Translations under genes and position numbers: made by a program
In this document: positions 27,461-51,075 of the stretch, piece by piece
Position numbering within the stretch: position 1 is the first letter of the stretch
How the letters are laid out: each line of letters begins with the position of its first letter
Notes under the pieces: generated by a model
What the model was told of the DNA's origin: nothing
The model's database searches: none
Seen by the model: the letters and a program-made list of their open reading frames with translations, nothing else
Assembly: GCA_937625935.1 (NCBI GenBank)
Contig: OW569394.1
Span: forward strand, 124,001 to 188,000
DNA: 64,000 nt
Reading direction: 5' to 3'
DNA from: Tetramitus jugosus
Taxonomy: Eukaryota > Protista > Heterolobosea

Positions 27461-27530
27461 CCAATCGGAAAATTACACAAGAATAAATTTCTCCTCCATC
27501 AGAAAAAAAACAAAGCACGAAACATTGATC

Positions 27531-28459: not shown

Positions 28460-29440
28460 ATGCCAAAGAAGTCAACCAAGAAGGTAGAGCAATCCAAGAA
28501 GCCTGAGAAGGAAATCAAGTCAGACTATCACTGGAGCAAACTCAGAAGTAAGGAAAAGGATACTTCCAAGAGAGTCCTGCCCGACACGGTTTTGCCAGGT
28601 ACCCGCCAAAGAACCAACTACAATTACAATTTGAGTGCCATGGCTAAAAATAATGTCGATGACGAAAAGGTTGTCAAGCGCAGACCAAGTAACTCTGTGA
28701 ATTCATTGGAGCAGAGAGAAAAGCTTGCAAAGGTTGCCAAGAAAAAGTCTGGTTCTAGCAATAGCAAGGACACTGTCGAACAACGTCGCAGAAGAAAGCC
28801 TACAAAGAAGGATCAAAAGCAAGAAGAGGAAGAAGAGGAAGAAGAGCCTACTACTGTTGTTGCCAAGGCCAACAAGACCAACAACAAGAAGGCTCCTGCA
28901 AACAACAAGAGAAGCAGACAAGAGAGAGAACAGGATGATGAAGAAGAAGAAGAGCATGTCAGTGGTACCGAAGAAGATGAACAACCAAAAGCAAAGAAGG
29001 CTGCTGTTTCCAAGAAGCAAGGAGAACCATTATCCAAAAAGGTGCTTGATTTGGCTGAAAAGTTGGGCGCCAAGGCCAGTACAAAGAACAATATTCGCTT
29101 GTACGCCAACAAGTATGAAGAGCCTCTTGCCATTAGTACCTTTAACAATTTGAAGTGGCCAAAGGTTTGTTTTGCTTGTGACAAGCACAATTTTGGTGGT
29201 ATGGAGTTGATGGAGTTGGATCTCGCAGAGAGAAACGAATACAAGTTTTTGAGAGATCCAAAGACTATCATTATTGGATCTGGAGATGTCATCTTGGCAG
29301 CCAAGTTGGATGACTTGTCTAGCGACTTTAACGTTTATATTTTGGATGATGAGCAGAAGGAGAAGTTTGAAGGACCTGTTAAAATCTCTGAACTTTTGAA
29401 GGAAATGACTGTTGATGAGGAAGTTGACGGTGCAGAATAA
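28460..29440 (+). CDS. Lys/Glu-rich protein with a C-terminal SMI1/KNR4 (SUKH)-like domain
   Basis: Strongly biased codons; disordered basic/acidic N-terminal half; C-terminal PLAISTF...IIIGSGDVILAAKLDDLSSDFNVYILDDE...KISELLK. The domain call is by pattern only. Confidence 0.65.
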   Translation: MPKKSTKKVEQSKKPEKEIKSDYHWSKLRSKEKDTSKRVLPDTVLPGTRQRTNYNYNLSAMAKNNVDDEKVVKRRPSNSVNSLEQREKLAKVAKKKSGSSNSKDTVEQRRRRKPTKKDQKQEEEEEEEEPTTVVAKANKTNNKKAPANNKRSRQEREQDDEEEEEHVSGTEEDEQPKAKKAAVSKKQGEPLSKKVLDLAEKLGAKASTKNNIRLYANKYEEPLAISTFNNLKWPKVCFACDKHNFGGMELMELDLAERNEYKFLRDPKTIIIGSGDVILAAKLDDLSSDFNVYILDDEQKEKFEGPVKISELLKEMTVDEEVDGAE

Positions 29441-29527: not shown

Positions 29528-32500
29528 TTAGATGAAGTGTCTTGCTTTCTTTGCAGCTCGCAGAGCATTCAAAGCTGAAGTGGACGGAGATCCAATTAAC
29601 TCCATTTCACTATTCGAATCAGATGTGGTAAATTCTGTTACGTCAGACATTTCAATTTCAGCCTGTCTTGCATACTTTCTTGAAAACATTGCCTTAATTC
29701 TGTTGTCCTCACCGTCGTCCACCTTGTACATCTTTCTGGCGACACTCGCAAATTGATCATCCTCCAGAGAGGTCACATTCTTGTCCAGAACAAATTCAAA
29801 TTTCCAAGCGTCCAACTTTGCTTGCATTTCTTTCTTTCTCTTGGCAGATAACAATCTCCAGAGAATGAAAATGATCACTGGAATGAGGAGAGCAAAGAAT
29901 AAAAGGAAGAACAAACTTCCTGCGATGGAAGAAACCGCAACTACTACACCCTTTGTGTATTGTTTGACTTGATCAACAGGAGTAGGTGGTAGGGGTGCCA
30001 TATTCTTGGGAATGTTGGTGATATTGCATTCAAAATATTGACAAGTAACCCATACTCTATCTATTGAAGCAGTTAGGGTCATAGTGTTTTGTTGTAAGTG
30101 TCTCGAATCTTGTTGGATCAAGCTCTGAGCGATAGCTAAGTGACCCGTAGACAACATCTTTTTGAAAATTTCTACTTGGGGCCTCTCTGTGTTGGCTGAT
30201 ACTTGACATATTTGAGAGTACCCTTGCTTGACACTGGCATCAATTCTCCATGGTTCGTCTGGTAGAGGACTGGAAGCATTTGAAGACACATTTTGAATTG
30301 AAAGCCATTCATAAAACAATGTTTCGTTCATATTCAGCATTTCAACCTCGGGTCTGACCAATTTCAATGTTAAACTATGAGGTACCCCCATTGTAAAAGA
30401 TGGACATCTTACTCTCGAAGTGAACACACGATCCCCAAGTTGATATGAGGAGGATATGGTTTGAGATCCTGCTGCATCAACAGTGATACTGGCGAAAGCG
30501 TTATAGGTATGATCCAGCTCCGATGTATACCATAACTCCAAAAGGTTTCCAGTTTGTCCTGGATCAATTATGAACTCTACCACTAGTTGTTGATCCAAAG
30601 TCTTGACTAGAGGCGATTTAGAGCGGAACATCGCTCTCGTATGAGAATCAGAAAGATAGGAAGTTAATCTGGAAATGGAACGACTTGATACTTCATCAAA
30701 TGGTATCCATTCCGTGGTGATGTCATCTTGAGAAGGGAGTATTGACTCAAATGTATCATAGAACGAATTGTGATCGAATGAGTCATAGAAAGCTAATAAA
30801 CTCGTATCAATGTAATAGAAGAATGCAGGTGTATCTTGGGACGAGAATTCTCTATTCATCATTGTGACAGTTACTTGAACAACGTTATTATTGGCACCTT
30901 CAAATAGAGGAACAGGACACTCAACATGTCTCTTATCGATGTTAGTTGACATCACATCTATTGCTTCCTCCTCACCATTGAGTTTTTTCCAGAGGAATGT
31001 GCATGTAATATTCTTTTCCTGTGAGAACCAAGGTGCGTATAACGAGATAATGTCTCCCTGTTTCGCTGTCGTAGGACTGATACTAATGATACTTGGTTGG
31101 AAGTACACGAGAGAGAGGCCTTTCTGAGGAACACCTGTGGAGTTTGAGACTGAGTATATTAGAAGATCGGTAAATTCAACACTTCCCCTGTCTGACGGCC
31201 ACTTGAAGGATGGTTTGAAGCATGCGTCTCCTGTGAGACCTATAGAGCTACACGCCACAAGATTTGTGGTAACTTTTACATCAGAGATAGGATCAATCAA
31301 AGAAATTTTCGATTGGCCATCTAAAGTCAAATGTTGACCTCCTAGTCTTATCCATGAACTGAGCATCGAATCGGCAGGGATACCAGATGGTGATAAACTA
31401 TCAATGAGAGGTTCCCAATTTCCGATGATAGTGAAGAATTTATCATTCAGGTCTCTGGGGTACACTGATGGCGAGGCATCGAATGCTTTGTTCTTTGGAA
31501 CAATCATTATAAGTCGCTTCTTCAGGTCATTCAGGTACACGTGGGAGTTTGACTCGTATTTCACATCTGCAAAAAATCCACCCGCCAAGTCAGTAACAAG
31601 AGATAATTTATCCCCACTTATTCTCGATAAATAGGTTCTTCGTAGAAGATGAACGGATCCATCCACATACATTAGCGCTTGAACATCAACTATGGAGGGG
31701 AATGATTTAAAAACAATCAATTCTGAAAGTACTCCTGACGAGGTAACTTGTAAGATGACCACTTTTTCTGTTGTTCTCTTTCGAGCAAGTAAGTAAATAT
31801 TTCCGGTTGTAGTGTCAATAGTGGTGAACCTGTTGTTACTACCTCCTGTGAGAGGAGTGTATAGAGTTGTCGAGAACACTTTGTCACCACTCTTACCAAA
31901 CAAGCTCACAGAGTGAATCCTTATTTCACTCTCAAGGGAAACTACAATCATTGAATTAGCGTTGACAAAAACAGCTGACATGTTCATATTTTCGATCTTC
32001 TGGTCGGGTAATGGTCTTAGCAGTGTCAATGCTTCGGAGTTAACGGTATAGATTCCATCATCTCTCAACAAATAGAAAGATTTTGAGAACTTGCTATAGA
32101 AGGTCCCAGAAGAATTCAGTGTTCGGAAGGAGTACATGGCTCTACCACAATTGAGATCCACTAATGAAATATTTTGTGACGGACCATCTGGGAGAGAAAC
32201 CAGTAAAAATTCACTGCTGGTGTCACATTGACTCCGCACAATCTCACAATCAGATCCAGCGAAGCCTGCTAGACATAAACACTTCTCGGGAGCTATGCAA
32301 CTGCCTCTACCACTACACACATTTGTGTTGTTTCCAAATATTTGATTACAAATTGGAATGTTGCAGATATCGGATACATAACCATCTACACACCTGCATG
32401 TATTTGGTTGTATACAAGATCCGAACCCAGAGCACACATTTGACTCATTTGAGAGTCGTCCATAGCACTGTACAAGTTGACAGCGATCACCATTATAACC

Positions 32501-35500
32501 ATTATTACACGAGCAACGGTTTGGATCTACGCATGATCCGGCCCCGTTACAAACAGAGTCATTTGATGCAGGGATACCAAAGCAGATAGGGATTGAGCAA
32601 TTTGTGCCAGAATACTCAGGAACACACGAGCATGTGCTTGTAGTGTGTTCTTTTTCTGGAAAACAAACACAAGTGTCAGGTGCGATACAGTGCCCATTCC
32701 CACTACATACTAATGGATCAGACTCATTCTTCGAGTAACAAATATTGAGTTGACACTCATGACCTGTGCGACCTTCGGAGCATTTGCATTTATCAACACC
32801 AACACAAGTACCATTTGAGGAGCACACAGACGAATCAGTTTCGTTAATTCCATAGCACATTGATAATTGACACTCTATACCTGTTCTTCCGAATGTTCTG
32901 CTACAGTTACACGTATCAGCTGACACACATGTTCCAACACCAGAGCATGTATCCCGATGATCATATGGAATTCCGAAACATATTGGATCAGAACAATCAC
33001 TTCCTTTCCATCCATAAGAACAATTACACCTATCAACAGAATAACAACTACCATGACCACTACAAACCATAGGATCTGTTTGATTCTTCCCGAAACAAAT
33101 ATTCCACTTGCATTCGGTTCCCGTTCGCCCAAAGTCACATTGACAAGTGTCAGTGAATATGCATGAGCCCCTTCCAGAACATACTTCTTGATTATTTGAT
33201 GCAGGAGTTCCAAAACAAATCGGAATATTGCAATCAAATCCTGTCCATTGATTAAAGGAACAATTACACTTGTGCGGTCCAATGCATTTACCATGACTAT
33301 TGCACACAAGTTCATCAGTTTCATTGAAACCGAAACAATAATTCAACTCACAATTAAGTCCTATTCTACCCTCACTACACAAACAGATGTCAGGTTCATA
33401 GCAGAATCCATACTTCGAGCATACGGATCTATTTGTGCCCCAAACATCATAACACAAAGGAACACTGCAGTCTCTGCTGACCCAACCATCAGTACAATTA
33501 CACTTATCTGGTTTATAGCATGAACCATGAGTAGAGCACACCTCTGGAGCCGTAGTATTAACTTCAAAACAACTAGGGTAGTAGCATTCCAAACCAGAGT
33601 ATCCATAGCTACATTCACAATTATCTGGAGATGTACATTTACCATGATTTGAGCAAACATTTACTGTATCGTTGGATAGTTTTCCATAGCAGATAGGGTA
33701 CTGGCACTCATTTCCCGCAAATCCACTATCACAGACACATTCATTCGGTGAGTGACACACACCATGTCCTGAACAAACATAGTGATCAACATCTAGTCGT
33801 CCATAACAATCAATATACTGACAATCAGTTCCATTGTAGCCTCGTTGACACAAACATTGATCTGGCTGCTGACAGTAGCCTCGCCCATGGCAAACATTTG
33901 TGTGGTTATACTCCAGGATACCATTGCAGACGTTTTGTTCGCATTCCAATCCACCATAACCGCGAGTACATACGCAAAAGTCGATATTGATACAGTTTCC
34001 ATGTCCTAGATGAGAATTACATGATGGGGGGACAGTTGTTAGGTTTTTCCCGTAACAAGTCAATGGGACACAGAAGCCATCCGCATCAAACTTGGTGAGA
34101 CATGTGCAATTGTTAGGTGACACACACGTTCCATTCTTTCCATAGTTACAAGACGCTGGATTGGTGGCATTCAACCCAAAACAGATCGGAGTGCTACAAT
34201 AAGGATCAGTGTATCCAGTCGTACAGTTACACTTACTGGGAGTGAGACATCGACCATGTCCAGAACAGTCCTTGCTGGTGGACAATACTAAATCAACAGA
34301 AGTAGCTGGGGCTTGATAGATGGTTTCAATTCCAGTAATTCTATCAAAATATCTGCTGTAGCAAACAGGATAACTGCAGTTACCTCCTGTATATCCAGGA
34401 ATAGGAATAGAGTAGCACATACACACATCTGGATCAATACACACTCCCTTTCCACTACAAACCAATGAATCATTAGTGTTTCGACTGTGGCATATTGTGA
34501 ATTGGCAGTTGTTGCCATTGTATCCTCTCGTGCAGTTACACACTCCTGGTCCGATACATTGACCATGAGAGGAGCACACAGCAGGATCATTTGATGGGCG
34601 ACCGAAACAATTAATATATTGACAACGATCACCGGACCACTTATTGGGATCACAAATACATGTGTTCAAGTATTTGCACTCTCCTCTTCCTGAACAAACA
34701 TTCGCTGTATCAGTCATATTGAATCCAAAACAAGAAGTGAATTCACAATTAGTACCAGAGAAGCCAGATTTACACACACACGTATCCCAATCAGTACATG
34801 TTCCATTTCCAGAGCAAACATCAGGATCATCTTGAAGAACATTGAAACAAGTTTTTCCATTGAATAGAGCCAGAGAATGAGTAAATCCCAATGAGAAGAA
34901 CTCTGTGTATCTCTGTGTAAAATTAGACGCAGTGATCTCTGGGACAAGTTTGTTTGTTTTTGAGTAATCACCTAGTTGGCCAATGTAATTGCTGCCCCAA
35001 GCCAATACCTTTCCAGTGTCAGTCAGCGCAAATGAAGAGCCGTACCCACTAGATGCAATCTCAACAATAGTATAACTAGAAAGGAATGTGAGTAGATTCG
35101 GTAGGCATTGAGCATCTGTCGTGTTGATACCTAGTTGCCCTTTGTCATTAGCGCCCCAGCACCACACTTGTTTCTTGCTTGTCAACGCGCAACTAAAGTC
35201 TTCACCACCAGACATTTTCTCAATCGACTCTGACTCCAAACCTTTCACTTTAACAGGAACAGAGGAGAGAGAAGTGGAAACACCTTGGCCCAATTGACAT
35301 TTCGAGTCATCCCCCCAACCGTATAATACTCCGTCAACAGTTGTTGCGAGCGAATGATAAGCACCCACAAATACACAGACCGCTTTTTTGATACTGAAAA
35401 TGCTCATGACACGAATAGGCATTAATTTTGACTTAATATTGTCAAGTGTTCCATCTCCCAACTGCCCAAACAGGTTCCCTCCCCAAGAGTACACCTCTCC

Positions 35501-38500
35501 GTGAGCAGTGAGAGCCAAACAATGGGTGCTTCCGCACGATGCAAACGACACTCTCGTTGTGTTTAGGGAAGAGATGATTACAGGAGAGTTTTGTGATGTG
35601 CTCTGGTATCCAAGACCGAGCTGACCTTGCTGGTTGTTTCCCCAAGTATACAATGACCCATTCTTTGTTGAGACTACGACCGATGAATAACCAACAGCAA
35701 CATTTGAAACGGTTAAATTTTGTTGAGAGTACAATGAAAGTACAGGAGAAGACTTGCCACTCAGTGTTCCATCGCCCAACTGACCTTGGGTATTAATTCC
35801 AACAGAATACAATTTTCCATCAACGGTTAGCGCCACTGAAAATAAGTTTCCAGCACCGACAAATTGAATCGGTATTGTGTTCAATGATGCTGCTTTGATA
35901 AAGAAATTAGTGCTAGAAACTCCTCCATTTCCCAGTTGCCCGCTTGTGCCATCTCCTGTTCCATACAAGTATCCAAATCTTGTCTCATTACAGTTCTGAC
36001 CTCTGAAATTTGGGTGACAAACACAAGTATTGTTGGGAATGCACACGCCATTTCCGGAACACACCATTAAATCAGTGTTACTCACTCCATTACAAAATAA
36101 TTCACTGCAATCCTCTGCTGAAAATTGTTCCTCGCATGCACATACATCATCGTTTGTGCACAAACCTCTACTGGCGCAAGTATTCTCATCATCTGCTAAA
36201 AATCCAAAACATGATGTTCCATTGTACAGGAACACTGTGTGTTGGAGAGAAGGTGCGATATGAACAATGGAACGAATGGGATATTCATTCACCACGGGAA
36301 CGGGACTTGAGGAAGAAACAGTTCCACCATTTCCCTGTTGACCTTGAAGATTAAATCCCCAAGAATAAGCTGTGCCATTCATTGTCAACGCAAACACATA
36401 ATTTCTCCCTGCAAAGATGGATGTTGTTTTCTTGTCGACTCGAGGATCCAAGATTGGTACTGGAAGTCTTCTTCCTAGAATATTCGTTACCCCATCCCCT
36501 ATTTGGCCCTGTGACGCCCCTCCCCAAGCAAAGATTGACCCATCAGAGAAAACTACATATGTATTTTCTTCTGAGCCTTCAACAGAAATTGCTGTCTTTC
36601 CTTTAAATTGAGAATTGAGGACAGGAATGGGGGAGTAACGATTAAAGATTGCCCCATCTCCCAATTGACCGAATGAATTCGAGCCCCAGATGTAAATTAC
36701 ACCAAAAGATCCGATTCCCATCATGTGATTCCAACCTGATGCAATCTTTGAGATTGGTATCTGATCTAAAATTCCAAGACCAACTTGTGTGGGAGTAGAC
36801 AATGGCCAGTTATCTCCATTTCCAAGCTGTCCGTTTGAGTTCGATCCCCAAGCAAAGATACTGCCATCATCAATGAGAACTGCAGTATGCGCTTCTCCAC
36901 AAACAGCTTGGACAACCTTTCGTCCTGCAATTTCACCTGCAACTTGAATGGGTGAGTGATTATCATTTGAATCTCCATTTCCTAATTGTCCACGATTGTT
37001 CCTTCCCCAGGTAAACACTCTTCCATCAGAGTCCACAATCACTGTGTGAGAATATCCAGTGCATCCTGTCATAGCATTCACACTGCTCATTCCGAGAGGC
37101 GAAACGGGAGTGAATCTTGTTGCCGTGGTACCATCACCCAACTGGCCATAATTATTCAACCCCCAACCAAACACTTGACCAGATGGTGTGATTGCAATTG
37201 AGAAATCCTTGCCTGAATCAACATGCGAAACAACGCGGCCAAACAAGTCTCCAGTGACCGGAACAGGCAATTTATGAGAGAAAGTGTATCCATCACCCAT
37301 TTGACCGGAGGATCCTTCTCCCAAAGCGAAGGCAAATCCATTGACAACTCTTTCACATTTTGTTCCAATATATCCAGGACGGCAAACACAAGCATCAGCA
37401 GCAAGACAACTTCCCCTGCCGGAGCACGTTAAAGTATCATTCGGATAATATCCAAAGCAATGGAATGAGCTACAATCTGGAGCATTATATGGGAAATCGC
37501 AAATACACTTATCCTGATCAATACAACTTCCTTTGGTGGAACAAACTGTTGGATCATCTGCAAACTTTCCAAAGCAAGTGGTGCCATTGAACAAGTAAAT
37601 CGAAAAATTATCACCAGCAACTGATGCTGTGGGATAGATACTTTGATATTGTTTTTGGACTTGAACAGCTGACATTGTTGTTGAATTGTAACTTCCATCG
37701 CCCAATTGACCGTACATGTTGTCGCCCCAAGCTATGCTTGTTTGATTGTCCAATAGAGCATGAACAAATGATCCACCTGCACTAATGGTCAAAACTCTGA
37801 TATCATCTGGTATGACTGTCACTCGTGTTGGAATTTGCTTGCCAACGGTTGTACCATCTCCCAGCTGACCTGCGTTATTTGCGCCCCATGAATACAAAGA
37901 TCCATCAAACGCCATAACCATTGAAAATGAGTCACCGGCAGTAATCTGAGAAACTGGTTTTCCATACAATAGTCCAGGAACTTGCACAGGCAAAAATTTG
38001 TTTGTTTTTGTGCTGTCTCCCAACTGTCCTTTGTCATTTTTACCCCACGCGTAAACAGTTCCATCTGATCCCAATGCCATCGAGTGATACTTTCCTGCAG
38101 TAATCTGAACAATTCTCTTGTTTTTCAACAAGGCAGCAACTTTGATTGGTGTGTATTTGAGAATGAAGGAGTTGTCTCCCAATTCTCCATCAAGGTTGAA
38201 ACCCCAAGTGTACACGGATCCATTGAAAGAAAGTGCCATGCTGTGATAACCTCCACAGGCGATTGCAACAATATCTTCTGTCAATAATTCACCTGTGACC
38301 CGAGTTGGAGTCAATTGCAAATCTTGAGGAGAGTTAATACCGATCTGACCGTATTGATTGGAACCCCAAGCAAACACTTGACCATTCGCTTCTAGTGCCA
38401 TAGCATGAGACACACCACCACACAATCCAATAATATTTGATCCGCCAAGAATATGTTGCTGAATTCCTTTGGAAAAGGTGGAATTATCTCCAAGTTGACC

Positions 38501-41500
38501 TCTATCGTTCCTTCCCCAACTGTAAATTTCGCCACTTACTGTCTTCAGAAGGGAGTATTCATATGATGGCGCAATCAAGTTGATCAAAACTGTCGAAAAA
38601 AGTGTTGCTCGGTCGACAGTTGGTCGAAAACCAACACCTCTACTACCTAACTGAGAATATGAATCTTGACCAGAAGAGTACAAGTAACCAAATGATTCTA
38701 CTTCACATCGTCTTCCAGAATACCCTTGATAACAGACGCAAGTATCCAATGAAACACATCTTCCTCCACCAGAGCAAACATTTGATTCGGTTGCATTAAT
38801 TCCAAAGCATTGAGCCACACTACAGTCCCTTCCTCCATAACTCGGAGGACACTCACAGTGATCCAGTGCAGTACAATTACCTCTCCACGAACACACTGTA
38901 GGATCATCAAACACAATACCAAAGCATGAAATTCCAGAGAAAAGAAACAGAGAGTGCTTCTTTCCTGCTGACATACTCGTGATATATCTCTGAGGCTTCG
39001 TGTTTCCAACAGCAGATGAAAAGTTTCGACTGACAAAGGTATAATCTCCCAATTGACCATCATTATTGACACCCCAACCATAAGCTGTTCCATTCGATGC
39101 GAGAGCAAGAACATAATTGGAGTTCTTTCCAATGGCAATTGAAGTGATTGGATAATCAGTTTCAAAGGGAATCTGAGCGGGATACTTTCGATTGATTACT
39201 ATTGAATTATCGCCGAGCTGCCTATTGGGAATGTTTGATCCCCAAGAATATGCTGTTCCATTCTTCAATAAAGCATAAGAACTATCAATTCCTGCACCAA
39301 TCGATATGACCGGTTCAGGACCAAAATCATTGCGTTTGACTGCGAAGGGCACGATTCTGGAGTAAGTGTATCCATCCCCCAATTGCCCCATTGTATTTTT
39401 GCCCCAAGAGTAAACTGTTCCATCTTGATTCAGAGCAAGTGAATGATAAATACCTGCCGCAATGGCAATAATATTCTTGTTATTCAATGATCCCTGAATC
39501 AACGATGGTGCAGTTTCGAATGCACTTGTAAATCCTCTTCCAAGTTCTCCATCACCATTTCTTCCCCAAGAGAATACTTTGCCCTTTGATGAAAGAGCAA
39601 GCGTATGTGCCTGACCACATGCAATATCAATGATTACTTCTGATCCAAAATATTGAGTTATGTTCACTGGAGAAATATATTGTTGGGTGTTTCCTGTTCC
39701 AAGCTGACCGAATGTATTAATTCCCCAAGCATACACATTGTTATCAAAATCAATTGCTAGTGAGTATCCAACGCATGCAACAAGATTGATAATCGATTTT
39801 CCTTCAAGAATAGACACAGGAAAATATCTTGTAAAAGTTGTGTTGTCTCCCAGTTGACCATAATCATTGTTACCAAAAGCAAAAACACCTTCAGTCAAAC
39901 TGACAGCAAATGAACTTCCATCTCCTGCAGAAATATAGTTGATATCTGTGAGAGCCAACAAACTGGCTTGTCTTGGATAGTTTTGAGAAACAAAGAATCC
40001 ATCTCCCAATTGAGAACTGGAATCATCACCAGATGCATACAGAAATTGTCTATCATTATTGTTGCACATTGCACCAAAATAACCAGCGTCGCAAAGACAC
40101 ACGTCGTTGAAGATACATCTACCATGACCTGAACAGACAAGTGCATTATCTGACCATGTACCATAACACTGAGCAATCGAACAATTAGACCCAGTGTAAT
40201 GATTGTCGCAAACACAAAAGTTGTCTGAGACACAAATACCTCTGAACGAGCAAACACTTGGATCATCAGCCAACACACCGTCACAATATGTTCCATTGTA
40301 AATCATCAGTGTGTGAGCATTACCAACGCCAAATGACACCACGAAACTCGTTTGATCTTGGAATCGAACAAGATGATGAGGAGAATACGCAGTAACTACA
40401 CTCATGTCTAATCCTAAATGTTTTCTTGTATTATCACCCCAGGCGAAGCTTACACCATCTTGTGTTGTTGCTTCAACAGAGTTTGACCATATGCTTGATG
40501 AAATAAATGAAACATTGACCAAACCATTCACTTGCATTGGGATTGTGAAAAGATCAACTGTTGAGTTAATACCAAGCTGACCGTTTGAATTATCACCCCA
40601 TGAAAACAATTTTCCGTCTTCTGTTGTTGCATACGCAGATTGTTTGCCTGATGCAATTTTGGTCACTGCAATCTTGCTGAACACTCCTTTGATCAACCTT
40701 GCATGAAAAGTGTTTGCAATGTTGGTTGTGCCATCAGCCACTTGTCCTCGAGAATTATCACCCCAGACAAACACTTTGCCTCGATCAGTCAAGACCATGG
40801 AGAATTTATCCCCTGCAGCAATTGAGATCACTTTCTTATCACCAAGTGGTTCTCCTATTGCTGTATTGACCTGTAACAGCTTTGGAGAGTTGAGATAAGA
40901 GCCATAGAATGATTTATCTCCCAATTGAGCATTGTTATTTTGACCCCAACCATAAGCAAATCCATTGGATGTTCGCGCAAGTGTGTGCTGGGAGCCACAT
41001 GCGAGCTCAACAACTTTACCACCAGAGTAATTGTCTGCTGGAGGGGTCACCATCACTGGATTGTTGCTCCAATAAAATGCACTATTTCCGAGAACTCCTG
41101 ATCTTGTTGGACATGCACCTGGACTGATGCATGGACATATTGTTTTTCCCAACGGAAGCACAACAGTTTTTGATCCCGTTGTATTTGTGCAACTCAAGAC
41201 TCCAAAAGTGTTCACACCCCAAGTGTAAATCACATTGTTATCATCAACCGCAGCGACATGATAAGTGCTGACACACATGTGAATGATATTGGAAAGAATT
41301 TTTTCTGGTCGATTCCTGTTCATCAATATTCCATCACCCAATAAACCAACTGTCACGTTTGAATAACTCCAGACAGCTCCCTTCCCCCAAGAAAAGAGTT
41401 CGCCATCCACTGACAGACCAAGCGAGATATCCACTCCAGATGTTGCATGCTTCACATATTTCCAATAAGTTAATGGAGCTGCCGTTGGTGCTGCAATCAA

Positions 41501-44500
41501 CTTGGCATCATAGTAATCATCTCCCAATTGGCCCTTTGAGTTATCACCGACTGAATAAAGAAGGCCATAAATGGATATCTCACATTCTCGACCAGTAAAA
41601 TAAATCTGGCATGCACAAGTATCGCGTGCAACACATGATCCATGGCCAGAGCAGACATTGCTATTGGATTGATTCAAACCAAAGCATACATTGATACTGC
41701 AATCAGCTCCAAGGTATTCTTCCTCACAAATACAATGGTCAGTTGAGACACAAGTTCCTCTTGTTGAACAAACACTTTCATCATCAGATAAGATCCCAAA
41801 ACAAAATGTTCCATTCAGAAGAAACATGGAATGAGAAGATGATGCTTCTGCTGCCACGAAAAAACTTGATTCATATGGATTCAACACTTGTGAAGGAGAT
41901 AATCTGCTGATACTCGTGCCATCACCAATCTTGTTAAAAGTGTTATCTCCAAACCCGAATGCTGTGCCGTTTCGTGTGACCACCAACGCATACTTGCTCC
42001 ATGTGCCAGCTGATATGCTCATGACTTCCTCCACTCCTTGCACAACAGTGGGAATATTTTGGTTGATTGAGGAGTTGATTCCCAACTGACCTGCGTCATT
42101 TTCTCCCCATGAGAACAGAGTTCCATCAGAAGCGATGGCATAGGAGGATCTTGTTCCTGCAGCAATCTGAATCACGCTCTTGCCAAACAATTGATTCATC
42201 ACTTGTCTTGGGTGTCGATTATTAAGTGTTGAAGCATCTCCCAATTGACCTTTGCTGTTATCGCCCCAAGTGTACACTTCACCTCTGCTTCCAAGTGCCA
42301 TGCTGTGATACTCACCTGCTGCAATGGCAACAATTTTGACTTCTGAAAGAATGCCTTTGATTGGACTGCTTGCACCAACTCGAACAGGTATCGTTTCCTT
42401 TCGTACCAAACCATAACCAACTGCTCCATAGGTTTCATCATCACCAAAACCGAACATATATCCTTCTTTTGTCAAAACTAATGTGTGCACGTGACCACAT
42501 GCCACTGTAATTGGTGTTCCCAATAATTCCGATACTATTGTTGGTGAAGAACTGTACTGTTTGGAAGCACCAATTCCCAATTGACCTGCAATTATTGAAG
42601 CAGTATTTGTTGTTCCATCCATTGTATTCACTCCCCAAGAATACACTTCACCAGAGCTTGTCACTGCTGCACTATGATAGGATCCCCTACAAACACTTAC
42701 AACTTGCTTTGATGAGAGTATTCTACTTGGAAAGAGTTTTGAAGTACCATAACCCCATGAAAATAGTTCTCCAGTAACAGTGATTCCAAATGATGCATCA
42801 ACGCCTGAGCTGATTTGTTGAACAAGAGTCCTATCGGCCAATGATTGATACGTTTTCGTCAACTCCGTCCTTGCAATTGTGTAATCATCTCCCAATTGGC
42901 CATAATTATTGTTTCCAATTGTTCGAAGTGAACCAAACACTGGCTGATCGCAGGCTTTTCCAGTGAAACCAACTGAGCACTTACAAGTATCATGATCAAT
43001 ACATGACCCATGACCAGAACAAACATCCAAGTTTGTGTTGTTCAATCCAAAACAAGTTGTGAATTGACATGCATTTCCAAAGTAATTGTTGGCACATACA
43101 CATATATCTGTCTCTGTGCAGTTTCCTCGAGTTGAACAAGCCATCACATCATCCATCGGATATCCAAAGCAATAAGTGGTGTTCAAAACCAAAACACTGA
43201 AAATATTTCCCGTTGTTGCAGCAACAATCTTCCTCGTTGGATAAGGATTCACAACAAGTGTTGGTGCTCTCTTTGATGTGATTGATCCATCATTTGCCTG
43301 AGAATTAGTATTGAGTCCCCATGAATAAGCTGTTCCATTTGATGCAATGGCAATCACTGTTCTTGAACTTGTCGCAATAGAAACGATACTCGCACCAGCT
43401 AAACTTGATACATGTGTTGGAATGGAGACAAACGAAACGGTACTGTCAATACCCAGTTGGCCAACTGAATTGTCACCCCATGAATAAATTTGACCATCTG
43501 ATGTCAACACGTAGGATGAATAATCTCCTGCGACAACTTGAATGACTGGCAGACCGAGTACTGTTGTAAACACTTGAATAGGGTGTCGACTGTCTGTTGT
43601 TGTTCCATGACCCAATTGCCCTTTGCTGTTGTCACCCCAAGTGTAAACATCACCTTTGCTTCCCAGAGCAATGCTATGATAGAGACCGGTGGAAACTTGA
43701 ACGACTCTGACATTGGAGAAGATGTCTCGAATTGGACTGCTGGCTGCAACCACAACTGGAGAAAGTGAATTCGCCCAATTTCCAATTCCCAATTGACCAT
43801 TTGAACCTTCTCCCCAAGCATATAACTTTCCTGATGAAGATAGTGCTATTGTATGTGAAGCTCCACAACTTACTGAAACAATTTGAGCACTGAGTGAAAC
43901 TTGTCTTGGAGTTGCGGAAAAGTAGTAAGAGCCTCCCAATCCCAGATATCCTATTATTGGTGGATAGGTGTAAGGATTACATGAGCAACTTGTGTCAGAG
44001 CAATAGGAAGTATTGGCAGGAGTACCAAGTGGACATGTCACTCGTCCATCTTGAGTGTTGCTTCCCCAAGAGAATACATTTCCGAGAGAATCAACAGCAA
44101 CACCATGATACTTTCCTGCGCAAGCACTGACAATGCTGCGATCAGAGAGAAGTTGAAAAGGTCTCAATGAATCTGTGGTCGTTCCTGTTCCCAAGTTGTA
44201 AAAACTGTTCTTTCCCCAAACAAACAACTTGTTCGTTCTGGAAACTGCAACAGTGAAATCCACACCAGCATCAATCAATTGGACATGTTCACCATATGAA
44301 AGTGGATATGATGTTCTTGTGAGAGTTGATTGATCAAGATAGTAATCATCTCCCAATTGACCATCTGAATTGGCACCAATTGAATAGCTTTCACCAAACA
44401 ACCAAACACTGCAATTTTTACCAGTGTATCCAGAGGCACATGAGCATGAATCATGCGAAACACATTCACCAAAACCAGAACAGACAGTTGGATCAGTGGA

Positions 44501-47500
44501 ATTGACTCCAAAACAAGTGGTCAAGCCACAATCGCTACCAAAGTAATCAGATTGACAAGTGCATGTGTCAGTTGCAACACATTCACCTCTCCATGAACAG
44601 ACAAAAGGATCATCCGAGAATAAACCAAAACAGAATGTTCCATTGAGCAGGAAAAGAGAGTGTTGAGTGCCAGCAGCCACTGCAACAATCGATCTGTTCG
44701 TGTATGTTTGTGTCACTGGATTGGCATAAAGTTTCAGTGTGGGTTGTGGTGTAATGATTTTGTCAGTCACTCCATTCAACAATTGATAATTGCTTCCCAA
44801 TCCCCAACCAAATCCATCTCCATTCAAATCTCCTGCAATCACAAAATCACTTCCAAATCTGCTCGATGACATTGTATTGATGGGCATTTGATTGTTCAAG
44901 GCAACTGGATTTGCTGTCTGTGCGACTGTTGAATTGATACCCAACTGATAATTTGTGTTGCTTCCCCATGCAAACACACTATTATTTGAACCAATCACAA
45001 AAGAAGAAAATGTTCCAGCACTGATGGATTTGATTGGAATTCTGTACAATGGAGAACTCACAATCTTCTTTGGGAATCGACTCAAGTTGGGACTTCGGAC
45101 AAGGTCATCTCCAATTTGACCATTTGCATTGCTACCCCACACGAATACTTCACCCATAGAGTTGAGGGCCATGCTGTGGTAGGAGCCAGCAGAAATTGCA
45201 ATGATTTTCACATCACTCAGAGTTCCACCTGATGCTAATGAGGGTGCCACTCGTACTGGAATAAAAGATCTGACATTTGTGCCAAAACCACCATTTCCCA
45301 ACTGACCATAAGTGTTGTCACCCCATGCCCATACTGCTCCACTCGACATCAACGCTAAGCAATGATACAATCCACATGATACCGAAACTGCTGTTCCAGT
45401 CATGCCAGTGACTTCTCGAGGTGTAGCACTGAAGAAATATGATGAACCTAACCCCAAATATCCAAGTATTGTTGGATTTGAAGTACAACTGACTGATGCA
45501 GAGTTCACACAACATTGTGTTTCTGTGCATTTTGCTGTTTCAGAAGTCCAATAGTCGTTACCATAAATATTTATCCTTCTTTGTTGGTAGTCATAGTCAG
45601 TGTCACATGAAAGAGTGTTGCAACCCCAAGAATAAACTTTTCCATCATCAGTCACTGCAACAGCGTGGTATTGTGCAGCTGAACCAGAAACAAACTTCAG
45701 GTTAGATTTCAAAATTGGGCGGATTCTTTGGATTCTCCCAAAGCCATTGACGGAACCGTAATAATAAAAATCTGAACCCCAAGTGTACAACTCTCCCTCT
45801 CGCGTGATAGCAAGCGAAAAATCCAATCCTGCAGACAAAAACTTCACATACTTGTCAGTGGAAAGTGGCAACGAAGTTGTCACAAGAATTGAACGATCAA
45901 TCTGCAAATCATCTCCAAGCTGTCCATCACTATTCTTTCCTGCCCCATAAATATATCCCATCACTGGTTTATCACAATTACTGCCAGCGAAAGAATCAAT
46001 GCAAGAACAAATGTCAAGTGCAACGCACGTTCCACTTCCAGAACAAACAGTTGAGCTATTGGAAGGAATATCGAAGCATGTTGTCAGCTCACATTCATTT
46101 CCATAATAACCAGAATCACAAGCACATCGATCCTCATCAACACATGTTCCTCTCCAATTGCACACCAATTCATCATCTGCCAATATGCCATAGCAAATTG
46201 TTCCGTTCAACAAGAGAAGTGAATGTGTACTACCTGCTCCAACACCTACCAAATATGTGGAGGGATAGTTTTCATTCACCACTTGCTTCACTGGTTGCAG
46301 TCTTGTTGTTGTGCTCTTATCTCCCAATTGAGAGAATGTGTTGATTCCCCACGAGTATCCAGCACCCGTTTCATTGATGCCAGTGACCCAAGAAGTGATC
46401 CTGCTGGGATACAATGCTTTAAAGTGGACATCATTGATGTTCTGAACAAATCCAGGCAATGATCTGGATGTACCTGCTGAAGAGTCACCCAATATTCCAT
46501 TCGTGTTACTTCCCCATGAATAAACTTGACCCTTGTTCGTCACTGCAAAAGAACTCTGGACAGACGCAGAGATATGCACAATTAATTCTGTGGTGATAGC
46601 TCCTGTTGCCAGAACGGGGACATTTTTATCCGTTAAGGTGGTATCGGCTAATTGGCCCATATTATTTCTTCCCCAAGAATACACTTCTCCATACTCTCCC
46701 AAAGCAAGTGAGTGATAATCACCCGCGGCAACTTGCGCAATATTAGTTAGTCCTAATACTTCCTGAGCAATTGCGAGGTTTGATGTCGATCCCACTCCTA
46801 ATTGACCAGCTGCGCCATACCCAAAAGAGTAGACTGTTCCAATATTGGTCAGAATTAATGTATGATATGCTCCACATGCGACCGACTTTGGAATTTCACC
46901 AGTATCAAACAACGGAGACGTGGTGAGCCCATATGAACCCCAAGTTTGAACAGTGCCATCCTTCTTGATGGCAACCACTCGGCCAACACCAGCACAACAA
47001 TCAAGAACATTGCTTGATATCTTTTGAGGTCTATCATTGTCATTGATAGATCCCCATGAATACAAATCACCAACTTGAGAGAGTGCAATTGAAAAATAGT
47101 TTCCTCCATCAACTTTGGTCACGATAACCTTTGTCAAAAGTCCACCAACCAACAGAGGAATCTGTGAATAACCCACGGAAGGAACATCATCATTCGCCAA
47201 GACACCATTGGATTGTTGACCAATTGAATAAGTGATTCCGCGCACTTCTTTCTCGCAATTCAAACCAGAGTATCCTGGATTGCACAAGCACACATCCACT
47301 CCTGCGCACACTCCTCTCCCAGAACAAACAGAAGAATTATCTCTTGCAATTCCGTGGCACTCAAAATAATCGCAGTTCAACCCACTGTATCCCTCTTCGC
47401 ATAAACATTGATCAAATGTGCTACAATTTCCATGATAAGAGCAAACAGATGGTTCATCCGCTAACACTCCATAGCAAGATTTGGCAAGATCATACACAAT

Positions 47501-50346
47501 CAATGTATGAACACATCCCACTGCCATGCTTAAAACTTGTCGATCAGGAAAATAAATGTGATAGTTAACTGGAGATATTCGTTGAATGCTTGTTCCATCT
47601 CCCAATTGACCAAAATTGTTATTTCCCCAAACATAGGCAAGAGAATCAGAGATTGCACTGACATGAGTCTGAGAATTACAAACTCCAGCAAATATCTTGG
47701 ATACAATTTTGTTCGAAAGAGGAACAGCCACTTTCTGGAAACTTAATGCGTTTGTTGTCGAGCCAATTCCAAGTTGACCATTTAAATTATTTCCAGATGA
47801 GTAGAGAAGACCATCAGCGATTACATGTGATGAATAACTGCTGGCAGCAATTCCAGTCACTTTTTTTGATGCCAGTACTCCTGTGTTTAACGCAATGGCA
47901 CGTGTTGCTGTGTTTAGTGTGCCATCACCCAGTTGGCCAACAGAGTTTTCACCCCAACGATACAGCGTTCCATCGTCTGCAATCACCATCGTGAATGATC
48001 CTCCTGCTGCAATTGCTGCCACTCTTCTTTTGTAAAATAATCCAGTCAATAAAACAGTCTGAGGAAGTGTCTTCTGCGCAGTTGTGCCATCTCCCAACTG
48101 CCCGAAGTGATTTCTCCCCCATGCAAGAACAGTTCCATTACTGAGAAGAGCAACGCTATGATATGAGCCACATGCCATAGAAACAACTCGTTCACCCGTG
48201 AGAGCACCTCCTATTTTAACTGGCGTGGATGTTTGAGCAGTGTTGCCAGTGCCCAATTGACCATAACTATTGTCTCCAAACGACCAAACACTTCCTGTTT
48301 CATCAACAACCAATGAATGAGTTAACCCTGCACACATAGTCACAGTGGGTCCGTTGAATGATCCTTCAACTTTCACTGGACTGCTTCTTGGTGTGGTCGA
48401 ACCATCTCCCAACTGACCATAATCATTCTTTCCAACTGAAAAGAGTGTGCCATTGACCAATAATATCAAAGAGTAAGACATGCCAGATGCAACAGAGTTG
48501 ATGTGTACTCCAGCAAATGCAGAAGAACTAACAGGAATCATTCTGGACACACCATTCCTTCCCAAGTTATCTGCCAATTGTCCAAAACTATTATCGCCGG
48601 AAGCATAGAGGAAACCTTCATCTTTCTTTTCACAATTCTGACCTGAATAACCTTGATGACACAAACAAGTATCAATTGTTAAGCATTGTCCATGTCCAGA
48701 GCAAACCATGTTATCTGATGCATTCTTGCCAAAGCAATAGGGCAAACTACAATCTTCACCTGTGTATCCTGTGTCACACTCACATTTATCAGTGCCCACA
48801 CAATCTCCATGACTGGAGCATACTAATGGATCCATCTTGAAGATTGAAAAACAAATATCGGAATCAATCAAGTACATAGAATGAGCGGATCCAGGACTAA
48901 CTTTGGAAACAGTGCTCAAAGCATAAGGTGTCCCAATCATCCTTGGAGAAGCGTAATCACTTCCTGTCGAACCTATTCCAAACTGGCCATTCATGTTATT
49001 TCCCCAAGAAGCAACGGAAGTATTCGTCACAACAGCATTTACATTTTCGGCAGCAAATCCTGAGAACACTAACCTTATGGGCACATCTGCCAAGATAGTG
49101 ACCAATACTGGGGATAATGATTTCGTACCTATCCCAGGATTTCCGAGCTCTCCATATCCATTGTGTCCCCAAGAATAAATTCTTCCATCACTCAAGACAG
49201 CGAATGTTGATATCTTTGATGCCGTGACGGATACAACCGAATTTAACAGTGTAAGAAGAAAAGGCTTGCCCTGACTAATTACTGAAGAATCACCGTTGCC
49301 TGATTGCCCCGATTCTGTCCCACCCCAAGTCCAAACATGACCTGCACTATCTAATGCAACATTGTGCCTCTCTCCTGCGGCAACGTCAACCCATCCTACG
49401 TCATTGGAAACAATAGTAGGAGCAAAGTTACCAGAACCTGTGGTTCCTTGAGCTAATTGACCGTCGACATTTCCACCCCAAGCAAATATTGTACCTGCTG
49501 AGCTGAGTGATATGGAATGAAACTTTCCACACATTACTTTGATTACGTTTGTAAATGCTGCAGGGCCACTCACCTTCTTTGGAGAGTAATAATTGGTTCC
49601 AGAAGGAAAACCAAGCCATCCAGCAGTAGCTTTCCCACTATTTGTTGCATCATTTGTTCCCCACGCGTATACATTTCCATCAACATCAGCTGCCAATGCA
49701 TGATAAAAACAAGCAGAAATCGAAACAATTCTCTTGTTTTGCAAATCACCTCTAAGAATGGAGGGAATGGCTTCAGAAGCAGAAGTAAATCCGAGTCCCA
49801 ACTGACCATAATTATTCGCACCCCATGCAAACACTTCGCCCTTTGTTGTGAGCGCAAGGGAGAACCCATCACCAGATGAGATGACTTCCACTCTCATTAA
49901 ACCAAAATAATCTCCCACTCGAATCATTGTGGAAGTGGTTAAACTCGTAAACAGTGGATCTCCCAACTGTCTATAGGCGTTATTGCCCGATGAAAACACA
50001 TGACCTGATCCTCTCGTGGCACAATTTGGCAAATCATATCCATCATGACACAAGCAAGTATCAGTTGCGATACAGAAACCATGAGCCGAACAAACAGAGG
50101 CATGACTTGCTAAAACACCGTTACAAGAAGGTACCTGAGCTAAGATAAAGAACGCACAATCACATGATGAAAAATGTTAAAGCACGAATCACAAACACAC
50201 CACAAGCAAACCACAACAAACATACCATATGTTACATTGCAACTCCATAACAACAACAGTAAAAATATCGTTGAACTCAGAAATGATATAGTTTTTGAGA
50301 CCTTAAGCATCATCCTTGGGTCTCGTTTTTTCTTCTTCTTCTTCAT
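29528..50346 (-). CDS. Giant (~6,910 aa) type-I membrane protein: 11 RCC1 propellers, ~42 tenascin-type EGF repeats, IPT/TIG-like region, TM; exons 50346-50226 and 50139-29528
   Basis: One uninterrupted 20.6-kb exon. Intron 50225-50140 (GTATG...TTAG) attaches a signal-peptide exon (FLLLLLWSCNVTYA-QVPSC). RCC1 blades (WGxNxxGQLG), EGF units (CSGxGxC...CxC...GxxC), IPT-like PSIISISPT, TM at ~29860-29945. Confidence 0.93.
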
Positions 50347-51075
50347 GTTGGAACTGAGGAGAGCATTCATTATGAGAGATGAGTTTTTTGGACGTCAATG
50401 ACGATACTGATATTATTGGTTGATTTTTTCTCTGCGAGGACAATTTTCGAGCACAGAGCCCAGCGACCCACACCAGCTCGTTTGCCACGCAAGCGATCCC
50501 CGAGCGAGATACAACTGTAGATCTCCTATCGGAAAAAATTGAGCCGGCCGCCGCTTCGCCTGTTGTAGTTTCTCAACGGGCCAGAAATGGGAAATGGTTG
50601 GTCCCTGCGACCGATTACAGACATTCCATTGGTAATACTGTATGCAGGTTCACAAAAGAATGTTCTTTCCGAAAAATGCCTGGAGAGGACGTCATGCCAA
50701 GAATATGGTGCTCTGTTGTTGCTTTTTTTTCATCGCAACTTTCATGTCGCAAACGCAAGCAAAAACAAACATAACAACAAACGTGTGTGAAAAATGAGAA
50801 AACTGCTCACACAACGACGAAGATGAACAAAGGTATGTTTTTCACGGGAGAAGATTAACAAGCTTTTTGGATGTGAAGAAACAAAAATCACCAACAATAA
50901 AATTTGCTCTCCCATCCACCATTTGCAGCACTGTCAACTTGCGCAAAAAAACAACATCTACCCCCAAAAAACAGATTTCTTTGTGTGGGCTGTTTGTGAA
51001 AGTTTTTTATTGGCTTATTTCTAAGAATTTTTTTCTGGCTTCAGTTAGTTGTGATGTGTGCAATTATCGTGTCAG

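What the first reader, a model, noticed from the sequence alone, without database searches (positions are those of the whole stretch)
29528..50346. ~6,900-aa surface protein: 11 RCC1 propellers strung on EGF pairs above a 21-EGF stalk
Seen: a strictly modular chain of signal, EGF, [RCC1 propeller, 2 EGF] x10, an 11th propeller, 21 tandem EGFs (~34850-32240), a beta-rich/IPT-like region, TM and a ~110-aa tail, almost all in one 20.6-kb exon. Known: eukaryotic RCC1 propellers are mostly intracellular (Ran GEF, HERC, UVR8), while the related BLIP-II fold is a secreted binder. Inference: a very long multivalent adhesion or prey-recognition receptor. The modules are highly diverged yet the ORF is intact, which suggests long-term selection. 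RCC1+EGF proteins are plausible in Naegleria-like amoebae, so the family may be annotated but uncharacterised.
Basis: partly seen in the sequence, partly recalled or inferred. Interest (0 to 1): 0.8.

Follow-up and report, generated by a model that had tools for sequence, protein, structure and literature searches.

The report
Giant amoeba surface protein, eleven propellers
A soil amoeba makes a single 6,910-residue membrane protein that carries eleven different RCC1-type propellers (a fold that in eukaryotes is otherwise mostly intracellular) on a rod of EGF domains outside the cell. It belongs to a small, apparently undescribed receptor family that most likely grips prey or surfaces at many points.

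Summary
One open frame (29531-50140, minus strand, 6,870 aa) joins in frame to a 121-nt signal-peptide exon (50226-50346). The layout is an N-terminal EGF, ten [seven-bladed RCC1 propeller + EGF pair] units, an 11th propeller and 21 stalk EGFs. A roughly 765-aa module follows that Pfam does not recognise in this copy, then one membrane helix and a 109-aa tail with a conserved motif. The unrecognised module models as a propeller-like domain, two IPT/Ig-like sandwiches and a ConA-like lectin jelly roll. The propellers are only 25-43% identical to each other, yet each matches the propeller at the same position in paralogues (56-79%) and in a metagenomic co-orthologue (45-62%). The array is therefore old, and position is conserved. 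This 26-Mb genome has at least seven such genes, with 5 to 16 propellers each. The scan had already found this family on other DNA of the same genome (s1-553195). Outside it I found four giant metagenomic relatives and a Naegleria fowleri hypothetical protein that has the membrane-proximal part but no propellers. I found no paper on it. The function (multivalent adhesion or particle capture) is inferred, not tested.

The parts
50226..50346 (-). Exon 1: start codon and signal peptide (40 codons + 1 base). An alternative start is the ATG pair at 50313-50308.
   Evidence: In-frame join. RNA contigs cover 50226-50341. A 69-nt gap in the soil strain at 50341|50411 would remove the first ATG.
50140..50225 (-). 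86-nt spliceosomal intron (GT..AG)
   Evidence: Joint 50139|50226 in RNA contigs of X1, X2 and X3, with 103-116 letters on the shorter side. An unspliced contig is present in run X12 of the organism itself.
29531..50139 (-). Exon 2: 6,870 codons without a stop; stop codon at 29528-29530
50021..50125 (-). N-terminal EGF (aa 6-40)
   Evidence: six-Cys pattern
48854..50020 (-). Propeller 1, membrane-distal tip, seven RCC1 blades. It is the least conserved position (56% to the closest paralogue).
48754..49514 (-). Segment replaced by 780 other letters in the soil strain (about aa 209-463: blades 4-7 of propeller 1 plus the first EGF of pair 1)
   Evidence: unexplained
47477..48631 (-). Propeller 2
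46196..47254 (-). Propeller 3 (blade 2 degenerate)
44633..45973 (-). Propeller 4 (447 aa), with a Cys-rich insertion in blade 3
   Evidence: The EGF-P4-EGF model has pLDDT 93.1 and pTM 0.92. Its best structural matches are RCC1, UVR8, RPGR and HERC2.
45350..45643 (-). Blade 3 of propeller 4 with its 'knob' insertion (aa 1500-1597). It is more variable than the rest of the propeller, and 9 amino-acid changes against the soil strain cluster at aa 1529-1551.
43172..44410 (-). Propeller 5 (knob in blade 3, window 43841-44083)
41804..42949 (-). Propeller 6
40286..41581 (-). Propeller 7 (knob in blade 3, window 40976-41230)
38927..40063 (-). Propeller 8
37577..38704 (-). Propeller 9, the most conserved position (79% to C22, 52-53% to distant paralogues)
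   Evidence: Sequence match to UVR8 at 2.8e-61, HERC2 at 7e-50 and BLIP-II at 2.4e-13.
36212..37354 (-). Propeller 10
34850..35989 (-). Propeller 11
32246..34849 (-). Stalk of 21 tandem EGFs, rich in sequons (32 N-x-S/T per 1000 aa). The fifth EGF has a long first loop, a landmark present in all the giant (RCC1-bearing) family members mapped here.
31493..32209 (-). Membrane-proximal module, part 1: small beta-propeller-like domain (aa 5978-6216; modest model confidence)
   Evidence: About 24 strands in 4-strand groups. Weak propeller-type matches.
30803..31411 (-). Membrane-proximal module, part 2: two IPT/Ig-like sandwiches (aa 6244-6446)
   Evidence: Model. Plexin and ROS1 matches. TIG hit in 2 of 8 paralogues.
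30008..30802 (-). Membrane-proximal module, part 3: ConA-like lectin/glucanase jelly roll (aa 6447-6711)
   Evidence: Z 13-15.6 at rmsd 2.9-4 A over 180-215 residues to galectin-like, legume-lectin-like, ERGIC-53, GH16 and thrombospondin C-terminal domains
29858..29947 (-). Single transmembrane helix (aa 6732-6761)
   Evidence: hydropathy maximum; helix in the model
29531..29857 (-). 109-aa cytoplasmic tail. A conserved motif (KLDAW...ARKMYKV) lies at 29720-29818.
   Evidence: alignment A1 of 8 paralogues

Best explanation
This is one expressed gene for a type I membrane glycoprotein of about 733 kDa before glycosylation. It belongs to a lineage-specific family of giant amoebal surface receptors. 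Shown: a signal peptide is followed by an N-terminal EGF, ten [seven-bladed RCC1-like propeller + EGF pair] units and an 11th propeller. These sit on a 21-EGF stalk, followed by a module of a propeller-like domain, IPT-like domains and a ConA-like lectin domain next to the membrane. One helix and a short tail with a conserved motif complete it. The eleven propellers are not interchangeable, because each position has its own conserved identity across paralogues and species. Inferred: the propellers are ligand-binding beads held apart by stiff disulphide-bonded EGF spacers. One molecule, perhaps 100-200 nm long if extended, can then make many weak and different contacts with a particle, prey cell or substratum. 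Blade-3 'knob' insertions and the distal tip supply variable contact surfaces. The lectin-like domain and the conserved tail couple binding to the membrane and to the cortex or uptake machinery. In design it resembles LRP/megalin-type receptors (propeller + EGF arrays), built with RCC1 propellers in place of YWTD ones.
For: Gene model. Domains. RCC1 fold. Outside orientation follows from the signal peptide, 42 six-Cys EGFs, 93 sequons in the ectodomain and a single helix. Non-equivalence of the propellers: 25-43% identity within the protein against position-for-position best hits of 56-79% to paralogue C22 and 45-62% to P0002. The last four positions are kept in all family members. Family: seven giant genes in G000 with 5-16 propellers and the same stalk landmark and C-terminal module. 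Expression in soil: spliced contigs in three studies and a 9.1-kb RNA contig. Variable surfaces: the knob of propeller 4 is less conserved than its scaffold (54 vs 68%) and holds 9 clustered amino-acid changes against the soil strain. The tip segment 48754-49514 is replaced in the soil strain. Lectin-like juxtamembrane domain. Conserved tail motif. Multi-RCC1 giant proteins predicted to be extracellular are reported in bacteria (bioRxiv 10.1101/2023.11.21.568195).
Against: No ligand, localisation or phenotype is known. The binding role of the propellers is inferred from architecture alone. I could not read model coordinates, so I do not know on which face the knobs lie. The RNA evidence comes from contigs of a strain 1-5% different and covers only 44800-50341 directly, plus a contig that runs on to about 37.6 kb. 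The 3' third was not checked. The count of 22 nonsynonymous against 14 synonymous codons rests on 40 of 175 listed differences and is not a selection test. The knobs of propellers 5 and 7 are no more variable than their scaffolds.
Confidence: 0.55

Rival explanations
1. It is a self/non-self (kin, mating or aggregation) recognition receptor. The polymorphic distal tip and knob loops would mediate homotypic or allele-specific binding between amoebae, as polymorphic Tgr receptors do in Dictyostelium.
For: The tip segment 48754-49514 differs wholesale between this genome and the soil strain, and the alternative junction also appears in two contigs of the organism's own run X12. Amino-acid changes cluster in the propeller-4 knob. 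Earlier notes of the scan place the organism near Acrasis and Naegleria, and Acrasis aggregates (s1-532670, unchecked).
Against: Only one variable segment and one knob are documented, and from contigs. Seven paralogues with strongly conserved position-specific propellers fit conserved ligands better than allele matching. No paired ligand gene was seen next to it.
Confidence: 0.15
2. It is mainly a structural coat protein: a long glycosylated spacer that forms a glycocalyx or pericellular matrix and protects or lubricates the cell, without specific ligands.
For: Very large size, a heavily sequon-bearing EGF stalk (32 per 1000 aa), several paralogues of different length, and steady presence in soil metatranscriptomes.
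Against: A passive spacer would not need eleven propellers that each keep a position-specific sequence over long times, nor a conserved cytoplasmic motif.
Confidence: 0.2
3. The long frame is not one functional gene. It would be several genes or a decaying repeat array read through by chance, or foreign (bacterial) DNA in the assembly.
For: Giant multi-RCC1 proteins are otherwise mostly bacterial in the databases.
Against: 20.6 kb without a stop. A spliceosomal intron is confirmed by RNA. EGF modules and a eukaryotic-type signal peptide, membrane helix and tail are present. Collinear paralogues lie on six other contig positions of the same genome. RNA contigs tile the part examined.
Confidence: 0.02

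Closest known systems
LDL-receptor-related proteins (LRP1, LRP2/megalin, LRP4/5/6) and the Sevenless/ROS1 ectodomains
   Same: Very long type I receptors in which beta-propellers alternate with EGF modules along the ectodomain. They bind many ligands. The C-terminal module's model drew megalin, LRP4/6, ROS1 and Sevenless among its multi-domain Foldseek matches.
   Different: Those propellers are six-bladed YWTD propellers, and here they are seven-bladed RCC1-like. There are no LDL-A repeats and no YWTD Pfam hit, and no NPxY in the tail. The resemblance is one of design, not of descent.
Bacterial giant multi-RCC1 surface proteins (Verrucomicrobiota 'cadherin-like beta sandwich' proteins; the Oscillospiraceae RCC1-type giant genes of bioRxiv 10.1101/2023.11.21.568195)
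   Same: Several to many RCC1 propellers in one protein of 4,000-8,000 aa that is predicted to be extracellular.
   Different: They have no EGF spacers. Their partners are FN3, Big_2, dockerin, cadherin-like and peptidase M23 domains. The paper reports no membrane anchor. Identity to single propellers here is 25-42%.
RCC1, UVR8, HERC2 RLD and RPGR (intracellular eukaryotic RCC1-like domains) and BLIP-II (secreted bacterial inhibitor)
   Same: The same seven-bladed fold. Sequence E-values run from 2.8e-61 (UVR8) to 2.4e-13 (BLIP-II) for propeller 9. TM by target is 0.82-0.88 for the propeller-4 model.
   Different: The eukaryotic ones work inside the cell as single domains or in sets of up to three. 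Here eleven lie outside the cell, flanked by EGFs, and some carry Cys-rich blade-3 insertions.
Naegleria fowleri hypothetical protein XP_044560383.1 / KAF0975670.1 ('EGF-like domain-containing protein', 1,197 aa)
   Same: Signal peptide, six EGFs, the same membrane-proximal module (profile E 8.6e-19 over positions 208-778) and one membrane helix.
   Different: It has no RCC1 propeller, is far shorter and is only distantly related. It shows that the membrane-proximal part is older than the propeller head.
Teneurins and tenascins
   Same: The EGF modules score best on teneurin and tenascin-type EGF models. They are tightly packed 35-aa EGFs with 4-aa linkers, which suggests a rod.
   Different: There is no YD shell, NHL, FN3 or fibrinogen domain. 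Only the EGF type is shared.

Membership tests
RCC1-like domain superfamily (Pfam PF00415 / PF25390) | Sequence match above the curated cut-off | tested here: met
   WD40_RLD scores 1564 and 995 bits (cut-off 150); RCC1 scores 1048 and 807 bits (cut-off 21.7)
RCC1-like domain superfamily (Pfam PF00415 / PF25390) | Seven blades of about 50 aa per domain | tested here: met
   Seven blade matches in each of the 11 units. Blade 3 is split by insertions in P7, and blade 2 is degenerate in P3.
RCC1-like domain superfamily (Pfam PF00415 / PF25390) | Seven-bladed propeller fold like solved RLDs | tested here: met
   Model pLDDT 93.1. Best PDB matches are RCC1 1i2m_B (E 7.9e-33, TM by target 0.85), UVR8, RPGR and HERC2.
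RCC1-like domain superfamily (Pfam PF00415 / PF25390) | Guanine-nucleotide exchange on Ran (RCC1 proper) | not testable with these tools
EGF-like domains, non-calcium-binding (teneurin/tenascin type) | Six cysteines in the C-C-C-CxC-C spacing | tested here: met
   41 regular units plus one with a long first loop. EGF_Teneurin, EGF_2 and EGF_TEN score above cut-off.
Calcium-binding EGF (PF07645) | cbEGF consensus or Pfam hit | tested here: not met
   EGF_CA is absent from the hits at E <= 0.01.
LDL receptor family (LRP) | LDL-A repeats, YWTD (LDL-B) propellers and an NPxY tail motif | tested here: not met
   No PF00057 or PF00058 hit; no NPxY in the tail. It is an analogue in design only.
Amoebal RCC1-propeller/EGF giant receptors (family defined within this scan) | N-terminal EGF, repeated [propeller + EGF pair] units, a stalk whose fifth EGF has a long first loop, a C-terminal module of about 890 aa, one membrane helix, and the tail motif | tested here: met
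   The six giant G000 genes and P0002, P0004, P0091 and P0092 share the head and stalk layout. The C-terminal module is 30-59% identical to those of the six giant G000 paralogues (23% to the 1,020-aa chassis-only copy on C15). P0091 and P0092 end in shorter C-terminal regions (437-462 aa) that I did not compare.
IPT/TIG domain (PF01833) | Pfam match in the membrane-proximal module | tested here: inconclusive
   There is no hit in the window's copy at E <= 1. Two of 8 paralogous modules hit at up to 9.7e-07. The model shows two Ig-like sandwiches with plexin matches.
ConA-like lectin/glucanase fold | Jelly-roll fold match covering the domain | tested here: met
   Z 13-15.6 at rmsd 2.9-4 A over 176-215 aligned residues of model residues 480-745. 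Sugar binding itself was not tested.

The most novel reading that the evidence does not exclude
The family is an RCC1-based recognition repertoire. A fixed, position-coded set of propellers would read conserved ligands. The membrane-distal tip and the Cys-rich blade-3 knobs would be hypervariable between strains under diversifying selection. Amoebae would then have a non-immunoglobulin, non-LRR variable receptor system for prey, pathogen or kin discrimination.
Probability: 0.15. Interest if true: 0.85.

Novelty: new variant of a known kind. Interest (0 to 1): 0.6.

Why it matters
In eukaryotes RCC1-like propellers are mostly known as intracellular modules (Ran exchange, HERC ligases, UVR8, RPGR). 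Here at least 75 of them, in seven genes of a 26-Mb genome, are displayed outside the cell on EGF rods. That is an independent invention of the 'propeller + EGF' receptor design of LRP/megalin, using a different propeller. Each position keeps its own sequence, so the family offers a ready-made set of natural binding scaffolds whose ligands could be identified one propeller at a time. It also gives a concrete molecular handle on how free-living heterolobosean-type amoebae, relatives of Naegleria fowleri, grip prey and surfaces, which is little understood. The strain-variable tip and knob make the question of recognition diversity testable.

Tried and rejected
1. The word-index protein search with the C-terminal module, restricted to giant proteins, found nothing. 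The exhaustive profile search later found P0002 and P0004, so that blank reflects a limit of the index, not absence.
2. The ESM Atlas search by features gave no usable hit. The Atlas search by shape gave only weak rows with TM <= 0.5.
P0001 and P0024 come from unnamed metagenome assemblies, and 20 cluster look-ups gave only one named organism.
4. I tried to place the organism with S-adenosylhomocysteine hydrolase. The best solved relatives are 5v96 (822 bits) and 6uk3 (811 bits), nearly tied, and the tool names no organisms, so this is not decisive.
5. I asked whether the replaced tip segment is a mis-join to an assembled paralogue. The 30-letter loose end has no close copy in G000; the only hit is a 3-mismatch EGF-motif match at C51:198311. 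I rejected that explanation, and the segment stays unexplained.
6. I asked whether knobs in general are hypervariable. This holds for propeller 4 only, not for propellers 5 and 7.
7. Six literature searches found no paper that describes RCC1 + EGF surface proteins in amoebae.
8. The joined two-exon protein was never sent to a search or fold tool. The exons were joined only in a local script to check the frame, and every search used exon 2 or parts of it by reference. Exon 1 (40 codons) was not searched.


Full report
**Observation.** The mechanical ORF list shows one frame of 6,841 aa at 29528..50053 on the minus strand. The frame is in fact open up to 50140 (6,870 codons, no stop). A 121-nt upstream exon (50346..50226) joins it in frame across an 86-nt GT..AG intron, giving 6,910 aa. 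The product starts with a basic stretch, a hydrophobic core and a small-residue cleavage site, which is a typical signal peptide. I joined the exons only in a local script to check the frame.

**Domain map.**
- Pfam scores the protein at E=0 on the RCC1-like domain and RCC1 repeat models. It also scores strongly on teneurin and tenascin-type EGF models.
- The six-cysteine EGF pattern gives one N-terminal EGF, then ten pairs of 35-aa EGFs joined by 4-aa linkers. Eleven gaps of 353-447 aa separate these.
- A run of 20 regular EGFs follows, plus one with a long first loop. These are the 21 stalk EGFs at aa 5098-5965, window 32246-34849.
- An iterated blade profile finds seven blades in each of the eleven gaps.
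- Propeller 9 matches solved RCC1-like domains by sequence: UVR8 at 2.8e-61, HERC2 at 7e-50, RCC1 at about 2e-34 and BLIP-II at 2.4e-13.
- A model of EGF-propeller 4-EGF, built on 99 family units, is very confident (pLDDT 93.1, pTM 0.92). Its best PDB matches are RCC1, UVR8, RPGR and HERC2, with TM by target of 0.82-0.88.

**C-terminal part.** The last 904 aa have no Pfam match in this copy. A model built on eight paralogues (mean pLDDT 69; 80-90 over most of residues 280-750) shows four parts:
- A small propeller-like domain of about 24 strands.
- Two Ig/IPT-like sandwiches.
- A 265-aa jelly roll.
- A long helix that is the membrane span.

The jelly roll matches ConA-like lectin and glucanase folds at Z 13-15.6. 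The matches include galectin-like, legume-lectin-like, ERGIC-53, GH16 and the thrombospondin C-terminal domain. Whole-model Foldseek matches are propeller-plus-sandwich ectodomains such as plexins, ROS1/Sevenless, megalin and LRP4/6. TIG reaches 9.7e-07 in 2 of 8 paralogous modules. So 'IPT-like' is supported at family level, and I add the lectin-like domain. The helix is aa 6732-6761. The 109-aa tail carries a motif (KLDAW...ARKMYKV) that the paralogues conserve. The ectodomain holds 93 of the 94 N-x-S/T sequons, densest in the stalk.

**Transcription.** Near-identical sequence occurs in soil metatranscriptomes of several studies. I laid contigs on 44800-50700.
- RNA contigs of three runs from three studies follow the gene at 95-99% identity.
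- A contig of the organism's own run X12 crosses the exon/intron border unspliced.
- One RNA contig of 9.1 kb covers 44800-46723 and runs about 7.2 kb further into the gene.

Because these are contigs, they show neither strand nor transcript ends, and the 3' third of the gene was not examined.

**Evolution of the array.**
- The eleven propellers are only 25-43% identical to each other (mean 32%). The EGF pairs are 39-55% identical.
- The genome (26.35 Mb, 56 contigs) holds six more giant genes with the same C-terminal module. I fetched and mapped them:

| Gene | Propellers |
|---|---|
| C22 | 11 |
| C51a | 14 |
| C40 | 16 |
| C24 | at least 10 |
| C43 | 8 |
| C38 | at least 5 |

- Together with this gene, that makes at least 75 propellers.
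- All six share the stalk landmark of a long-loop fifth EGF. Likely signal-peptide exons lie before short introns in four of them, though these models have no RNA support.
- Best-hit analysis is strictly positional. Propellers 1-11 here match propellers 1-11 of C22 at 56-79%, and propellers 1-11 of the 7,087-aa metagenomic protein P0002 at 45-62%.
- C51a and C40 carry three and five extra propellers between positions 6 and 7.
- The last four positions are kept in every member, including the metagenomic P0004, P0091 and P0092.
- The array is therefore old and not homogenised, and each position is under its own constraint. This is the strongest argument that the propellers do different jobs.

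**Variable spots.**
- The propeller-4 knob is less conserved than its scaffold: 54 vs 68% to C22 and 42 vs 53% to P0002. The knobs of propellers 5 and 7 are not.
- Forty of the 175 differences from the soil strain were listed, and they fall in 36 codons. Of these, 22 change the amino acid and 14 do not. Nine changes cluster at aa 1529-1551 inside that knob. This is a partial list and no test of selection.
- In all three RNA runs the sequence leaves the window at 48754. In one long contig it returns at 49514 after 780 other letters. This replaces blades 4-7 of the distal propeller 1 and the next EGF.
- Two contigs of the organism's own run show the same departure. The alternative is not an assembled paralogue. 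This remains unexplained.

**Distribution.**
- A profile of the C-terminal module, scored against 1.84 billion representatives, finds only 84 proteins at E <= 0.001 and 22 at <= 1e-30.
- The only named one is a Naegleria fowleri hypothetical protein with six EGFs plus the module and no propeller.
- Among proteins of 3,800-10,000 aa in 5.8 billion clusters, the listed best 120 of 732 hits held four with RCC1 plus EGF: P0002, P0091, P0004 and P0092. All are metagenomic, with automatic names at most.
- The other listed hits carry no EGF. Their domain sets (FN3, Big_2, dockerin, cadherin-like, peptidase M23) and every named one point to bacteria. One such class is described in a preprint as predicted to be extracellular.
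- I found no paper on RCC1 + EGF proteins in amoebae.
- Earlier notes of this scan call the organism a probable heterolobosean. My own checks (the Naegleria relative, and a marker with two nearly tied best hits) are compatible with that but not decisive.

**Mechanism.**
- Shown: the protein is a secretory-pathway type I membrane protein with eleven non-equivalent RCC1 propellers outside the cell. It has a rod-like EGF stalk, a lectin-like domain at the membrane and a conserved short tail. It is transcribed in nature.
- Inferred: it acts as a multivalent binding receptor for particles, prey or substratum, working like LRP/megalin-type arrays. The tip and knob would be variable contact sites, and the tail would link to the cortex or to uptake.
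- Rivals are kin or mating recognition (favoured by the variable tip), a passive coat, and an artefact (practically excluded).

**Novelty.** The scan had already found and followed up this family on other DNA of the same genome (s1-553195, the 16-propeller gene, which my census places on C40). So this is a further member, not a first sighting. Against the literature and databases I could search, the architecture appears undescribed. I rate it a new variant of a known kind: giant propeller/EGF adhesion receptors, and extracellular multi-RCC1 proteins of bacteria.

Noticed in passing
window 51076-54612 (-): The next gene upstream is a 1,178-aa ORF with teneurin-type EGF hits (E 1.3e-05).
   Followed up: partly
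window 27390-28226 (+): A 278-aa ORF matches ER membrane protein complex subunit 10 (ECM10, E 5.7e-08). The 326-aa ORF at 28460-29440 (+), which ends 88 bases from this gene's stop codon and converges on it, has no Pfam match.
   Followed up: partly
G000:C15:176949-179096 (L008): A 1,020-aa ORF carries only the membrane-proximal module, a membrane helix and a related tail motif (23% identity). The metagenomic P0003 (955 aa) looks like its counterpart. These are propeller-free members, like the Naegleria fowleri protein.
   Followed up: partly
G000:C50:244466-244609 (L009); G000:C30:6688-7004 (L010, L011): Short isolated matches to pieces of the C-terminal module lie in ORFs of 74-171 aa. They may be relics of dead family members.
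   Followed up: no
window 50341-50434: RNA contigs of two soil runs skip 69 nt (50342-50410, non-canonical ends) and then diverge beyond 50434. The first ATG (50346) may not be used or conserved. The 5' UTR may differ between strains or hold another intron.
   Followed up: partly
G000:C40:409152-436895: The 16-propeller paralogue (9,248-aa ORF) ends about 6 kb from the end of its 443-kb contig.
   Followed up: no
window 47031-47035: The soil strains carry a 9-nt in-frame insertion in propeller 3, and a 3-nt deletion at 49932 in propeller 1. Length changes between strains keep the frame.
   Followed up: no
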